Shown: positions 11,530 to 24,700 of the stretch, one piece after another | Layout of the letters: each line of letters opens with the position of its first letter | Numbering within the stretch: the first letter of the stretch is position 1 | Assembly: GCF_052425735.1 (NCBI RefSeq) | Contig: NC_135760.1 | Coordinates: 7,688,001 to 7,752,000 of the forward strand | Length of the DNA: 64,000 bases | DNA from: Oculina patagonica | Taxonomy: Eukaryota | Direction of reading: 5' to 3' | Program-made: the position numbers and the translations under genes | Notes under the pieces: generated by a model | Databases searched by the model: none | What the model saw: only the letters and a program-made list of their open reading frames with translations | Told to the model about the DNA's origin: nothing

Positions 11530-14500
11530 TAACCTTCTTCAGGGGCTGAAAAAGCTAAGTTAAAAAAATGCATGACTTAAAATTGACGTTCACTGGACTC
11601 CTGGGACGTGTTGTTCAAAGCACGATTTATCTAATCCAGGATTAGCGTGAATTTCGATTTCAATTTTTTAACTTTTCAGTAAGGTTTTCTGTTTATACTT
11701 TTTGTTCTCCAGTTTTGACGTTCACTTACCTCAAACTGCACAGTGCATAAGCAATAAAAACACTTTTATACAAGGAAAATTGAACCCTCGATCAACATTT
11801 AATCCTCATCCTTGACGTTCAACAAGAGTACTAGGTGGATGAGTGGGGCATTTGGTCTTCAAACTGAATCTAAGGTTAGGGAGGGGAGGATGTTTGAGCA
11901 CACGAAAGGAGCCTGGGTATGAAACGATTTGACAACACTGTGCAATGTGAGAGGGCACTGATATCACAACAACTTTTCAGCTTTGTTAAATTCCCGACTT
12001 TGCGGTCAGCATGTCTCATCCGGTATGCCGCTCTGTATATTTCCTGTCACACTTATCCGTAATATATATCGTACATTTTAAAAATTCCTGTTTGTTACAA
12101 GTCATAGATGATAATTATATACTTAGGTCGTTTGGTCTGCGATCTGCGCATGTACGTGGGTGGGTGTGTACGAGTGTGTCCTAGAGCATGTTCGTTCTAT
12201 TTTAAGGACTTGTTTGGGATAAAAATATGCCTTATGAAAAACCGAAAAAGGAAACTTAAAGATTTTGTTTACCAATGACAGCGTCGCCGAAGGTAAAACT
12301 ACTTGTGCAGTTTCGTGTCGCATATTGAGGTAGTGAGCCATATTAGGATTTGGGACTTGACCCGATAGATAAACAACACTTGTTGAGGCCTGCTTTGAAT
12401 GAACAATTGGTTATTTGATCAATTGCAGTAGAGAACGAGCTTTGACAATTGAGCTACAATAAAGCTGTGATGCGTCAGTCTGAGAACTGTCGTTCGACTG
12501 CGAAGGTTAACTTTCGGTGAGTTGTGAGAGCTCGAGCTTTGAAGAAGAACGTCATCTGTGGAATACTTACACTGGCTCATCTCTGGCGTGATTCTTATTT
12601 TTCTGTCAATATTGTGTTTATTTTCAGCTTGACATTACATTATCTACATAACATGATCATATGATGATATTATCATGCATGTTGGCTTTCTTCGTTGGCT
12701 ACAGGAAAATACTAAAGATAAGAAAAATAAGGGAGCGAAAACGTATAAGAGACATGTAATTTCTGCGTGTGGCACAGATGACCCATGCATGTGTAGGTCT
12801 GTGTAGCTTTTGGGTCTTTGGCGCGCGCGCGGATGGCACTCGCAGCTCGTGGGGCTCGCCACTCGCGCGCAACTCTCGCCCGTCCAAGCTGAGGGCCTTA
12901 TCATGCCACCCAGGATCCAGATTTGACTGCTCGCATTCGACAAAGTGAAAGAAATTTTGAGAAGTTACTTAGAAACTTTTAGAAGATTTGGGCTTCACTT
13001 CCTGTTAAAATTCGAGCAACGCGGTGACGTAATATAGTTTTTCTTTGCATTTGTCTGTCTTTCCTTGAAAGGGAATGGGGAGTGGGTAGGGGGAGACTTC
13101 AACATATTGGCTTATTATAAAGAACGGTAATGGGATATAAAGGTTTCCCGCCTTTTTGGTCTATTTCAAGATCAAGGTTATATATTTTTTTTTATTATTT
13201 CCGAGTATTATAGCTGTCTGGAATGGGGTACCAAAATAAACATTGTTTTGGTCTGGGAAAAGGTTGATCCGCAGTCTGAAATGTATCTTTCCTCCCCCCG
13301 GCAGCCGACACGCGAGGGCAGAGGGGCAAACTACCGCAGCCAAACATTCTGCGATGGATGTTTTTTTAATGGAGCATACGTCACGAAGCACTTCACTTGA
13401 AAGAAAGCCAGTTGTATCCCATATGAGTGCGTCAAGACTTGTTCACTGCATATACGTAGACAATTTTATCAAAATTTAAAATGGTTGCTTGCCAACAAAG
13501 GGCATTAAAAGCCAGTATTATGTGAAGTGATTTTCTTTATCTTGGCTCGTGGACGGAATATAATACCGATATTTCACAATTCAATTGATCAAATGAATGG
13601 CTTCGTTACGTTCAGGTATTTTACGTTGTCTTGGACACACGTCCGGCGAACCTTTATCGCACCTCGACCAAACCGTCGTGAGAATTTGGTCTTTTCTGAA
13701 ATTAGTTTAATGACAGCCCACCTTAAAGTGTTTTTGTAACGCTACATATTTAACTTGGCACGAAATGATGAGAAATCCTTATTTTGGAAGTTTTTTTATT
13801 GCGTTACATCCCAGAAAAGGCTCAGTAAAGTTCATAGTTTTGACAGATTTTATATGGCGAGGTCGTCCTTTGCGTATAAATTCGAAAAATAGGTAATTGG
13901 CGTTTCTCGGCTTGTCAACTTTTGTATGATAATCATGTTATAATATTTTAAAACGCCTTTAATTCGCTGACCACAAGTCTTGGCTAGTCTTCCAAGGGCA
14001 GCAGAAAGGTTTCAGCGGATTAAATGTTTCCAATACTGTAAATAGCTCAGTCGCCCGTATGTTTTCTGCGGCTTGTTTGACAAAATTCTCCGACGGACTA
14101 ACAACTTTGTGGTCAGGTCACACACTTAAATATATAGATAGCTAGACGTTATTTGGCAACCTAGCTCAACCTAGGACCTTGGGTCGGTTTGGCATGTTTT
14201 TATTTCCTCAGAACATGAACCAAGATACCACAAATGAGAGGCTTGCTTTTTCACGTAGGCCCAATGACAGAATAGTTTTATGCGCTAAATTGGACATTGC
14301 GAGCTTTTAATTTAAACGTGTGTTCTTCAAGTCGAAGCCAAGTTCTTTACTAAACTCATTCATTCAGTATCGAAAAACTTATGTGGAACGCATACAGAAT
14401 ACAAATTTTAAACAAACAAACCAGATTCATTTGGACGGAATTCAGTTTAAACTCGGTGGAAAAGAAAAAACGAAAAACATTTGCACCGCCTAAGTTGGAA

Positions 14501-21725: not shown

Positions 21726-24700
21726 ATGGCGGCAAAGTCCGAACGACCATGTGCCTTGTCGCTTGATTTAAGGTCCATTTCTCCGAATGAAGACAGTTCA
21801 GGAAGCTGTGAAAGGTAATACTTTTAATGCACTGTTTTTAATTCACCACTTTATCGTGTAATTTAGTCTTCTCGTCTGGTTTTTGACAGTATAAGCGATG
21901 CTCCGCCGCAGCTGAAAGAGCCCCCCAGCTCTCCTCTCAAACCGAAAAGTGACAACGTTCGAGTGTTCCGTCGCTCAAACAGAACGATTTACACCGCAGG
22001 TAAGCTTAGAATTATCTTCGTGGTACTGTTTAATTGGCGAGATTAACCCATTTAGGTATTTAGGAAATTTTACTGCTTTTTTTGCCCGTCAGTGAAAATG
22101 TATACTACATAAAAAAAACAATGCTGAATTATCGTCTAGAGACATGTGTCTGTCATTTAGGATTTTTGTGTAAAGTCCATAGTTTAATTTCCGTCCAACC
22201 TCCTGTTGGTAAATGGATGTTCTCTAGTTGAACCAGTTGCAATCATGTTACGGAGCTTTTAAGTATTAAATTGTCAGCTGCAGTCAGACTGTCCACAGCC
22301 CTCTATTTTTTCGTGTTTTTTTCCATCGACGAGCGCACGGTGAGAACGGCGAGAGAACTGGACGCCAGCGCAAACGGAAGAAGCAAGGGGGTGGGGGGCG
22401 GGGAGCGAAAAAAATAGAGGGGCTGTAGACATCTTTGGAAATATTGAATTTCCCGTTTCCCCAGAAACGGAAAATTCCCATTGGTTGAGAGGCGGCAAAA
22501 GTGTCATCGCCTTAACAACGGCCGATTATGTTGACATGCTGTGATTTGTGATGAATCGATTATTGGAACGCTCGTTGAAGAAATTTCCAAACGTTTTGTC
22601 GCGCAAAGACGAGCAGAAAGAGGCTCTTCGCCACCTTTGTTCGAAGGACGTAGTTGGAATTTTACCGACTGGCTTCGGAAAAGCCTTATCTACCAGCTGT
22701 ATGCTAGGGCGAAACAACTGCAAGAAGATGGGAATGTTGTTGTTCTTGTTGTTTCGCCGCTAAAAAGCATAGGCATAGCTTTTGCGGCATAACTTTTGGC
22801 GAATCACTTGGCCAGCATAACTTTTGCCTCGCCGAGGACGTGTGAGGCGAACGTGACATTCTTTTGAATTGCTTGTCACGATCCACTTGCCTTGTAGGAT
22901 CTACACGCTTAAGATTTCTTTATAAATTCAACATTGCTTGCTGCAAGTCTAGCTTAGCTTTATATGCACAAGATGAACAACACAGTACTTGAACGAAATT
23001 CGTCTTGCACTGCAATTCCCAAATCGACCAAGACGTCTGCCAAGCTTCGCCGTAAAACACCTTCGCGTTTTCGCTCGACAAATAAATTATCCGTAGAGAT
23101 GTACAATGTCTTGCCGAAGTTCCCCAAGTGAATCGCGAATGAGCACCCGCATATTCTGCAAAAATCGGAGGGACCGTTGATTTCGGCTTTCTGCCTCTTT
23201 TTGCAGGTTTTTTGGGGGTTTAAGAAGTCGGCTCAGACGACATCCTCAACACCGAAATAAAAACTCACGCGTTGTTGTCACCACACGTGTAGTTTATGTA
23301 AATTGTTGCTTAGTCAATTAAACAAGCACTTTACCGCTCAAATTTAATTGGTCCGATTTAATTGAAAGGTCAAGAGGCGGAGTTGTAAATTACAAAGCGA
23401 TGACAAGGGGAGGAGTCTAATACTTCCACTTTTATTCAAAGATGACTACAGCCTCTCTATTTTTCTTTTGCTCGCTTCGCTCGCTTCCCGTCCCCCTCCC
23501 CCCGCGCGCTCGTGCTTCGCACTCGCTTCCTTTTGCTTTTTTGCGTTGAAAAATCGAGAGGCTGTGGACAGTCTAAGCTGCAGTTGAATATGAATATGTT
23601 ATTTCTGACCAACACTTATGAACCGTTTGTTTATTTCTACACCAGTCTCCCAAGTAGAGAAGGAATGTAGGGTTAGTACAGTAAAAACCCGCGTATAAGA
23701 ACCTAGGTTTTTTCAAGTTAGCCTAAACAGGTTCTTACATAAATGGTATTTAGTGTAAAATTAGGCTAACTAGGTTCTTAACTTTTGTTCAAGAAATAAA
23801 ATAATACAATACTGTAATTATATTCAAGGAGGACAAGTTTTATGTAACTATGCTGTAGCTATAATATGTACAGACTGTGTTATAAATATATTTTTGAGAA
23901 GATTATTTTTTTCTTTTTTGAAAATAAGAACCTGTTTTAGAATTTTAGCCTAAAATGGTTCTTATGTGAAGGGTGCTTAAAAATGAAATTTTAGCCTAAT
24001 AGGTTCTTAAATGTTAGGTTCTTATACGCGGGTTTTTACTGTATTAGAAAAGCTAGCTATGGCGATCCTTGCTCTAGATTCAGGCACTGATGTTTCTGTT
24101 GGTTAGTTGATCATATTTATGTGGGTGGGGGAGGGGGGGAAAAGTTTGCGGTATCCCTGTTTTGCGGATTTTTTTAAACCTGTGGTATAATGGCTTTCTT
24201 GACTAAGCAGTTCGCGGTTTGTGGAAATTTTTTGGTTAAATTCAACGTGGTGTTGCAGTTTTTGAAAGTTTTTCTGTGTGGTTTTGTGATTATCGTACCC
24301 CTTTTACGCCCCCCTCCATTATTATTTTATTAAAGAAAAAAAGAAAACTTAAACTGCTTTGAAAATTTTTAAACCAATGATAAATTTAAACCCCCAACAC
24401 AAACCTCTATATAGAAGTAGTTGTTAGGCTATATAACTATTGCTCACCATAAAAGACAGACTTGTTCATTAAGTCAACAAATGGACACAACAGAGAGTAA
24501 TCATAATGACTTGCACAAATTATATAATGCCAAAGGTCACAAAATAGGTCTGTTGTAAATGACTTATTAAAAAACTGTGAATTTTGGTCTCTGCTGCCAA
24601 GTAAAAGTATTTTTTTAGTTTAAATAGAATTTCTTGGCAAAATGATTTTTAACTAGTTGGATTTTTATTTTCCTTTGTTCCAGATTTATTACCATAATCC

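What the first reader, a model, noticed from the sequence alone, without database searches (positions are those of the whole stretch)
12000..22200. TGIF sits in a ~10-kb domain dense in its own binding motif: candidate autoregulatory landscape
Hand count gives roughly 23 TGACAG/CTGTCA hexamers in 12.0-22.2 kb, against about 4 expected from base composition and roughly 8 seen in the next 18 kb; many more TGACA pentamers are present. Clusters lie at 15294-15560, 15738-15786, 17820-17950, 19550-19570, 20357-20390 and 21024-21055, on both sides of the gene and in its intron. Established: TGIF binds CTGTCA(A) as a repressor and competes with Meis/Prep for the same site. Inference: negative autoregulation or a Meis-TGIF feedback circuit in a non-bilaterian.
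Basis: partly seen in the sequence, partly recalled or inferred. Interest (0 to 1): 0.72.

Follow-up and report, generated by a model that had tools for sequence, protein, structure and literature searches.

The report
Conserved TGIF-site clusters around coral TGIF
The coral TGIF repressor gene is surrounded by an excess of the DNA word that TGIF-type proteins bind, and the key sites, including a pair beside the likely transcription start, are kept from stony corals to sea anemones and soft corals, which makes an ancient self-regulating loop a testable idea.

Summary
There are exactly 23 TGACAG/CTGTCA hexamers in 12000-22200. Base composition predicts 4.3, and 20 random 10-kb pieces of this genome average 7.0 (maximum 16). 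This is the most enriched of all 2080 hexamers in that stretch, and single-base variants are not enriched. TGTCAAA is about five-fold enriched.

The gene is a two-exon TGIF on the minus strand (ATG 19440, stop 18318). Its splice junction appears in contigs of four public runs.

The real signal is narrower than "10 kb":
- A roughly 230-bp promoter block (19500-19770) is 82% identical to Nematostella and Exaiptasia.
- In that block CTGTCA-N4-TGTCAAA (19551-19567) is invariant in seven anthozoans, including an octocoral.
- It lies just after two CCAAT boxes, a TATA-like stretch and an invariant CCACGTGG.
- Intron, 3'UTR and upstream sites are conserved among stony corals.
- A partly conserved downstream element (15130-15900) holds seven more sites.

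In six other species, including a hemichordate and a chiton, CTGTCA ranks first of 2080 hexamers for concentration around the TGIF start.

Selection for TALE-factor sites at TGIF is therefore well supported. Whether TGIF itself (auto-repression) or Meis/Pknox uses them is untested. I found no paper on TGIF autoregulation. No other note on this feature turned up in the scan.

The parts
18318..18964 (-). TGIF exon 2: homeodomain, C-terminal Sin3-type motif and stop codon
   Evidence: ORF and Pfam Homeobox_KN 2.4e-17. tblastn with Montipora, Acropora and Nematostella TGIF2. The exon border is set by the spliced contigs.
18965..19397 (-). Single intron (433 nt, GT..AG on the minus strand) with two conserved TGACAG sites at 19121-19126 and 19298-19303
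   Evidence: The joint 18964->19398 is seen in contigs of 4 runs from 4 studies. Site 19121 is kept in 4 of 4 aligned stony corals and 19298 in 3 of 4.
19398..19440 (-). Coding part of exon 1 ([14 protein letters not shown])
   Evidence: tblastn, 86% identity to the first 14 residues of Montipora and Acropora TGIF2.
19441..19538 (-). 5'UTR as far as the abundant RNA contig of run X4 reaches; other runs extend to 19887 and beyond 21000
   Evidence: table 8. Contigs give only a minimum extent.
17659..18317 (-). 3'UTR (minimum extent) holding sites 17923-17928 and 17944-17949
   Evidence: X4 contig 17659-18964. Site 17944 is kept in L028, L003, L005 and L006; 17923 is not conserved.
19500..19770 (-). 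Deeply conserved promoter/5'UTR block
   Evidence: 82% identity to Nematostella, Exaiptasia and L006 by blastn, higher than the coding exon at 77%. Seven-species alignment A2.
19551..19567 (-). Tandem TALE sites CTGTCA-N4-TGTCAAA, 10 bp centre to centre, ending 111 nt upstream of the ATG
   Evidence: Both TGTCA cores are invariant in all 7 anthozoans, including the octocoral.
19710..19717 (.). Palindromic E-box CCACGTGG
   Evidence: Invariant in A2. It is the only copy in the 64-kb window and there is one copy in 200 kb of background. It lies at -268 to -295 in all 9 anthozoan loci.
19636..19683 (-). Two CCAAT boxes (19679-19683, 19636-19640) flanking a third TGTCA core (19648-19652); a TATA-like stretch follows at 19609-19626
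   Evidence: Both CCAAT boxes are invariant in 7 species. The TGTCA core is kept in the 6 hexacorals.
20357..20362 (-). Upstream site at -922 (CTGTCAAAC context)
   Evidence: Kept in L028, L029 and L003; TTGTCA in L005.
21884..21889 (-). Upstream site at -2449
   Evidence: Kept in L029 and L003; one change in L028.
15130..15900 (.). Downstream element with 7 hexamers (15303, 15466, 15554, 15738, 15764, 15770, 15781), partly conserved
   Evidence: Aligns with L028:13080-13990. One hexamer (15781) and three TGTCA cores are kept. A 17-bp local duplication contributes one site.
12000..22285 (.). Single-copy, repeat-free domain around TGIF, bounded by repeats
   Evidence: No second genomic copy of 12000-17700 or 19450-22285. 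A TE occupies 22286-23575. An inverted-repeat element lies at about 9824-11806.

Best explanation
The hexamers are functional binding sites for TALE homeodomain proteins and put TGIF transcription under TALE-factor control. The central device is a tandem CTGTCA-N4-TGTCAAA lying about 20-40 bp downstream of the start predicted from a CCAAT/CCAAT/TATA-like promoter. It is backed by sites in the intron, the 3' flank, up to about 2.5 kb upstream, and in one downstream element. The most likely mechanism is that TGIF protein occupies these sites and represses its own promoter through its Sin3-type C-terminal motif (negative autoregulation). Meis/Pknox proteins would compete for the same hexamers, and an E-box factor would supply activation through the invariant CCACGTGG. 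Shown here: the motif excess, its specificity, positional conservation, recurrence in other phyla, the gene model, and conservation of the DNA-reading helix. Inferred: which protein binds, the sign of the effect, and the exact start site.
For: The enrichment is real and specific to the word. The tandem pair is invariant across 7 anthozoans, inside a block more conserved than the coding sequence. Aligned TGACAG sites are kept in 50-86% of cases, against 24-30% for all aligned noncoding hexamers. In six species other than the window's, CTGTCA ranks 1 of 2080 hexamers for concentration at -1000..+1000, -1500..+1500 and -2200..+1700 around the TGIF ATG (Fisher p about 1e-6). TGTCAA and GTCAAA are also in the top six, spelling the published TGIF consensus cTGTCAa (PMC6446543). 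The coral homeodomain has the RRRGNLPK arm and [13 protein letters not shown] helix identical to TGIF1 in PDB entry 6fqp and the class-defining AYP loop (PMC7985065). Its C-terminus reads INLLVEVA, which fits the Sin3A-binding consensus hydrophobic-x-x-L-hydrophobic-x-hydrophobic-A (PMC8657803). Validated mouse TGIF targets carry two or more cTGTCA/TGTCAa sites over the transcription start (PMC6446543). The abundant RNA contig of run X4 ends at 19538, just downstream of the pair. The PBX-Meis/Prep composite TGATTGAC is not enriched.
Against: No binding or expression data exist for any cnidarian TGIF here. The hexamer is shared with Meis and Pknox, and this genome encodes such proteins. The site flanks are only weakly informative in an AT-rich genome. 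The density alone is not extreme: negative-binomial p is about 0.002, which would allow on the order of 100 such 10-kb windows genome-wide. Other runs show RNA contigs running through the block to 19887 and beyond 21000, so the pair may be 5'UTR rather than start-site DNA for some isoforms. Eight sites (seven between 12.0 and 16.6 kb, plus 22150) lie in DNA that does not align with any relative. I found no published TGIF autoregulation.
Confidence: 0.5

Rival explanations
1. The sites are real TALE sites but are used by Meis and/or Pknox (with or without Pbx) as activators or general promoter factors. TGIF is then simply a Meis/Pknox target and there is no self-regulation.
For: The hexamer is identical for Meis and TGIF (PMC6446543). 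Meis_PKNOX_N genes are present on C13 and C8 of this genome. Solved Meis and PKNOX1 homeodomains are the next-best structural relatives.
Against: The PBX-Meis/Prep composite TGATTGAC is not enriched in the region (1 copy, 1.0-fold). The most enriched extension is TGTCAAA, the TGIF-type flank. Placement over or just after the start site fits a repressor and matches validated TGIF targets (PMC6446543). None of this is decisive.
Confidence: 0.3
2. The conserved words act at the RNA level (5'UTR, intron and 3'UTR elements such as protein or small-RNA binding sites) or are read by an unrelated DNA-binding protein. Their match to the TALE hexamer is then incidental.
For: The sites at 17923/17944 lie in the 3'UTR, and those at 19121/19298 in the intron. 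The tandem pair lies inside RNA contigs of runs X1, X2 and X3.
Against: Sites occur in both orientations and also in upstream and downstream DNA. The block shows promoter features: two CCAAT boxes, a TATA-like stretch and an E-box. No Rfam family matches. The consensus fold of the block is weak (-13.2 kcal/mol over 300 columns) with a covariation term of -0.01.
Confidence: 0.1
3. Chance or composition: a unique, repeat-free regulatory island happens to be rich in this word, and the reader noticed it because the gene is TGIF.
For: The interval was chosen after looking. With free placement the hexamer ranks 11th in the window. Background counts are over-dispersed, reaching 16 per 10 kb.
Against: The motif was fixed in advance by the gene's identity. 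One-mismatch variants are not enriched. The same word ranks first around TGIF in six other species that were not used to make the observation. Individual sites are conserved beyond the local average.
Confidence: 0.05

Closest known systems
Direct TGIF1 target promoters in mouse (Acss2, Pcx, Mpc1 and others; PMC6446543)
   Same: They carry two or more cTGTCA/TGTCAa consensus sites at or over the transcription start. The sites are conserved between species, and repression needs the DNA-binding homeodomain.
   Different: Here the target would be TGIF's own gene, in a cnidarian, and no binding or reporter test exists. The sites also extend into the intron, the 3'UTR and a distal element.
Negative autoregulation of transcription factors through homotypic site clusters (general network motif)
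   Same: A repressor gene embedded in a cluster of its own recognition sequence, with sites next to the start site.
   Different: Autoregulation has not been reported for TGIF in the literature I could search. The identity of the bound factor is open because paralogous TALE classes read the same word.
Meis/TGIF competition at shared TGACAG sites (established from vertebrate work; my own knowledge of Yang et al. 2000 J Biol Chem, not re-read here)
   Same: The same hexamer. An activator (Meis) and a repressor (TGIF) are both encoded in this genome.
   Different: The known cases concern third-party target genes, not the TGIF locus itself.
TFEB activation of the mouse Tgif1 promoter (PMC9440911)
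   Same: An E-box-class factor binds the promoter-proximal region of Tgif1 and activates it. The anthozoan promoters keep an invariant CCACGTGG about 150 bp upstream of the TALE pair.
   Different: The mouse site reported is a weak non-canonical E-box. No homology of the elements is shown, and the coral factor is unknown.

Membership tests
TGIF class of TALE homeobox genes (the gene) | Homeodomain with a three-residue loop extension (Pfam Homeobox_KN) | tested here: met
   PF05920 E 2.4e-17, 62.9 bits against a cut-off of 24.
TGIF class of TALE homeobox genes (the gene) | AYP instead of PYP in the TALE loop (PMC7985065) | tested here: met
   The translation reads ...[13 protein letters not shown]....
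TGIF class of TALE homeobox genes (the gene) | Closest relatives are TGIF proteins, not Meis/Pknox/Irx | tested here: met
   The named best hits are TGIF2 of Montipora, Acropora, Nematostella and Exaiptasia. Against solved structures, TGIF1 scores 5e-35, PKNOX1 1e-16 and Meis 2e-15.
TGIF class of TALE homeobox genes (the gene) | C-terminal Sin3A-interacting helix, hydrophobic-x-x-L-hydrophobic-x-hydrophobic-A (PMC8657803) | tested here: met
   INLLVEVA lies near the C-terminus and is conserved in all cnidarian TGIFs listed. This is a motif match only; binding was not tested.
Direct transcriptional autoregulation | The factor's recognition sequence is present and enriched in its own regulatory DNA | tested here: met
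Direct transcriptional autoregulation | The sites are under purifying selection (conserved in orthologous loci) | tested here: met
Direct transcriptional autoregulation | The factor occupies those sites in vivo or binds them in vitro | not testable with these tools
   Needs ChIP/CUT&RUN or EMSA. Only the identity of the DNA-reading residues with TGIF1 is shown.
Direct transcriptional autoregulation | Changing the factor's level changes transcription of its own gene through those sites | not testable with these tools
   Needs knock-down or over-expression with a nascent-RNA or reporter read-out.
PBX-Meis/Prep composite elements | Decameric TGATTGACAG-type sites | tested here: not met
   TGATTGAC occurs once in 12000-22200, 1.0-fold of background. 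The single near-match at 15291 ends in A, not G.

The most novel reading that the evidence does not exclude
The TGIF promoter grammar predates the cnidarian-bilaterian split and implements TGIF auto-repression. That grammar is CCACGTGG, a TATA-like stretch, TALE sites just after the start and more TALE sites in the first intron. It would be one of the oldest retained transcription-factor feedback loops and one of the very few promoter architectures traceable across more than 600 million years. Hints beyond Anthozoa come from the chiton Liolophura. It has CCACGTGG at -144 and +144. It shares the 11-mer TTCATCTGTCA with anthozoans at -129, where they have it at -127 to -144. It has eight hexamers within -309 to +554 and AATGCG next to intronic CTGTCAAAC. 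Saccoglossus has seven hexamers within -265 to +987.
Probability: 0.25. Interest if true: 0.78.

Novelty: new member of a known kind. Interest (0 to 1): 0.6.

Why it matters
TGIF is a dosage-sensitive repressor of TGF-beta/Nodal and retinoid signalling, and it is linked to holoprosencephaly in humans (PMC7985065). How its own level is set is poorly understood. A conserved pair of its own sites at the start of its gene, retained from stony corals to sea anemones and octocorals, gives a concrete, mutable element to test in Nematostella, where transgenics and knock-downs are routine. The 230-bp promoter block is more conserved than the coding sequence between corals and anemones, which is unusual for noncoding DNA at that distance. 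It could serve as a model for deep promoter conservation in cnidarians.

Tried and rejected
Repeat origin: TRF finds no array at the sites. Only one 17-bp duplication adds a site. 12000-22285 is single copy.

Known RNA families: no Rfam match in 11500-23000.

Structured 5'UTR RNA: no covariation in the block.

PBX-Meis decamers: not enriched.

Acropora and Montipora TGIF loci could not be fetched because the products are not on record. Unnamed coral contigs L003, L005, L028 and L029 were used instead.

The background therefore rests on 200 kb plus the rest of the window.

Literature: searches for TGIF autoregulation found nothing specific.

Meis/Pknox loci: those fetched (about 3 kb each, 2-3 hexamers each) are too short to test the proposed reciprocal Meis-TGIF circuit.

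Start site: the RNA evidence comes from assembled contigs only, so the transcription start cannot be fixed.

The ten-kilobase "domain" as one unit: rejected in favour of a conserved core plus one distal element.
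Full report
**1. The observation**

A direct count gives 55 TGACAG/CTGTCA hexamers in the window. Exactly 23 start in 12000-22200. The following 18 kb holds 6.

Composition underestimates this word. The rest of the window has 0.59 per kb. Twenty 10-kb samples from five chromosomes of the same assembly average 7.0 per 10 kb, with variance 15 and maximum 16. The excess is therefore about 3.3-fold. Poisson p is 2e-6, and a negative binomial fitted to the over-dispersed background gives about 0.002.

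Among all 2080 reverse-complement-collapsed hexamers, CTGTCA is the single most enriched in this interval relative to the rest of the window (p 4e-6). If the 10.2-kb window may be placed anywhere, it ranks 11th, behind words that come from repeats such as poly-C and a tandem array.

The excess belongs to the exact word. The 18 one-mismatch variants are mostly 0.2-1.2-fold. TTGTCA, which keeps the TGTCA core, is 1.7-fold. The extended forms TGTCAAA and CTGTCAAA are 5.0- and 5.2-fold.

Repeats do not explain it. TRF finds nothing at the sites. One 17-bp local duplication adds one site at 15777-15786. 12000-22285 has no second copy in the genome.

The domain is bounded by an inverted-repeat element at about 9.8-11.9 kb and a 1.3-kb transposable element at 22286-23575.

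**2. The gene**

The ORF at 18318-19052 (minus strand) carries a Homeobox_KN domain. Its best named relatives are TGIF2 of Montipora, Acropora, Nematostella and Exaiptasia.

tblastn places a 14-residue first exon at 19440-19399. Contigs of four public runs from four studies join 18964 to 19398, skipping 433 nt with GT..AG on the minus strand. The gene therefore has two exons and is expressed.

The abundant contigs of run X4 span 17659-18964 and 19398-19538. Run X2 reaches 19887. Runs X1 and X3 have long contigs that continue beyond 21000. Being contigs, these give minimum extents only.

The homeodomain has the RRRGNLPK arm and the [13 protein letters not shown] recognition helix identical to TGIF1 of PDB entry 6fqp. 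It has the AYP loop that defines the TGIF class (PMC7985065). The C-terminus reads INLLVEVA, which fits the Sin3A-binding consensus defined for TGIF1 (PMC8657803). The coral protein should therefore read the same DNA word and act as a repressor, but this is inference.

**3. Orthologous loci**

I fetched TGIF loci with 10-kb flanks from these sources:
- Nematostella (L002), Exaiptasia (L004) and the octocoral Dendronephthya (L007).
- Five unnamed hexacoral contigs: L003, L005, L006, L028 and L029.
- The hemichordate Saccoglossus (L030) and the chiton Liolophura (L031).

Synteny with a uridine-kinase-like gene upstream is kept in the anemones and in the window.

**4. The promoter block**

Window 19521-19748 is 82% identical to Nematostella, Exaiptasia and L006. 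The homeodomain exon is only 77% identical.

Reading the gene strand in the seven-species alignment (coordinates), the elements are:
- An invariant CCACGTGG at 19717-19710.
- A CCAAT box at 19683-19679.
- A TGTCA core at 19652-19648, kept in the hexacorals.
- A second CCAAT box at 19640-19636.
- A TATA-like stretch at 19626-19609.
- The tandem CTGTCA (19567-19562), four bases, then TGTCAAA (19557-19551).

Both TGTCA cores of the tandem are invariant in all seven species, including the octocoral. The spacing is one helical turn.

A start about 30 bp after the TATA-like stretch would put the pair at roughly +20 to +40. The X4 contig ends 13 nt beyond it.

CCACGTGG occurs once in the 64-kb window and once in 200 kb of background. 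It lies at -268 to -295 in all nine anthozoan loci.

No Rfam family matches. A consensus fold of the block has no covariation support, so an RNA-structure reading is not favoured.

**5. Other conserved sites**

In pairwise alignments to other stony corals (about 72-76% identity):
- Site 19562 is kept in all seven alignable species.
- Site 19121 is kept in 4 of 4 stony corals.
- Sites 19298 and 20357 are each kept in 3 of 4.
- Site 17944 is kept in 4 of 5.
- Site 21884 is kept in 2 of 3.

Over all aligned noncoding hexamers, 24-30% are perfectly kept. For TGACAG sites the figure is 50-86%. Per-species p ranges from 0.004 to 0.2, and the species are not independent.

The anemones have intron sites at +288/+293 in a context similar to the stony-coral +314 site.

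The downstream element 15130-15900, with seven hexamers, aligns with L028. One hexamer and three TGTCA cores are kept.

The seven other sites between 12044 and 16584, and the one at 22150, lie in DNA that aligns with nothing.

**6. Replication outside the window**

For each locus I compared an interval around the ATG with the rest of the locus, for every hexamer, and combined species by Fisher's method.

Using only species other than the window's (L006, Nematostella, Exaiptasia, Dendronephthya, Saccoglossus, Liolophura), CTGTCA ranks 1 of 2080 at -1000..+1000, -1500..+1500 and -2200..+1700. It ranks 3 at -3000..+3000. Combined p is about 1e-6 to 2e-7 (anthozoans alone).

TGTCAA and GTCAAA are in the top six, spelling cTGTCAaa, the published TGIF consensus (PMC6446543). 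The other top words, AATGCG and ACGTGG, belong to the same promoters and introns.

In most non-scleractinian species the densest 2-kb window of the whole 21-kb locus starts within about 1 kb of the ATG.

The chiton shares CCACGTGG at -144 and +144, and TTCATCTGTCA at -129. It has eight hexamers between -309 and +554.

**7. Interpretation**

Selection for TALE-type sites at TGIF is well supported. It is old: at least the common ancestor of Anthozoa, and possibly older.

Which TALE protein reads them is not shown. TGIF, Meis and Pknox share the hexamer (PMC6446543), and Meis/Pknox-type genes are present in this genome.

I favour TGIF auto-repression with Meis/Pknox competition, at about 0.5, for four reasons:
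- The sites sit at the start of the gene, as in validated TGIF targets (PMC6446543).
- The TGIF-type flank is the most enriched.
- PBX composite sites are absent.
- The protein keeps both its DNA-reading residues and its Sin3 motif (PMC8657803).

A pure Meis/Pknox input is the main rival, at about 0.3.

I found no paper reporting TGIF autoregulation. TFEB activation of mouse Tgif1 through an E-box-class site (PMC9440911) is a loose parallel to the invariant CCACGTGG.

**8. Limits**

- The genome background is only about 250 kb.
- The intervals for the cross-species test were chosen after seeing the site lists, although three choices give rank 1.
- RNA evidence is from contigs, so the start site is not fixed.
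- A word search of the scan's notes returned nothing, and "TGIF" occurs in none of them.

Noticed in passing
window 19710-19717; L031 about 9857 and 10145: The palindromic E-box CCACGTGG is invariant at -268 to -295 in nine anthozoan TGIF promoters. It recurs at -144 and +144 in a chiton. AATGCG is co-enriched with it across species (promoter, intron). Together with the TALE sites this looks like a shared three-word vocabulary.
   Followed up: partly
window 22286-23575: A transposable element of about 1.3 kb with copies at 76-93% identity on many chromosomes (2534 first-look candidates). It marks the upstream edge of the repeat-free TGIF domain.
   Followed up: partly
window 8060-8485: A short interspersed repeat of about 420 bp at 81-85% identity, with 13,928 first-look candidates for the 6-kb query, nearly all scored ones falling on this repeat.
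   Followed up: no
window 9824-11806: Several local inverted matches (for example 9824-9998 with 11625-11806, and 10015-10279 with 10609-10876). They suggest a foldback or palindromic element just downstream of the TGIF domain.
   Followed up: no
window 29249-31770: Short blocks conserved with Nematostella, Exaiptasia and corals correspond to exons of the uridine-kinase/UPRTase-like gene that lies head-to-head with TGIF in the anemones. Synteny is kept, but the spacer has grown from about 2 kb to about 10 kb in this coral.
   Followed up: partly
Possible causes are a distal upstream start, read-through, or DNA in the libraries.
   Followed up: no
G000:C8:28412621-28414221 and 28425891-28427491: Two Meis/PKNOX-type N-domain matches about 13 kb apart have near-identical scores. 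This is either a tandem duplicate or an assembly duplication. A third gene lies on C13 at 17.558 Mb.
   Followed up: no
window 33041-43240 and 51700-54100: A strong local excess of CCCCCC (74 of 108 in one 10.2-kb stretch) and of AATCGA/GTTCGA (tandem-array-like) outranks the TGIF motif in the free scan.
   Followed up: no
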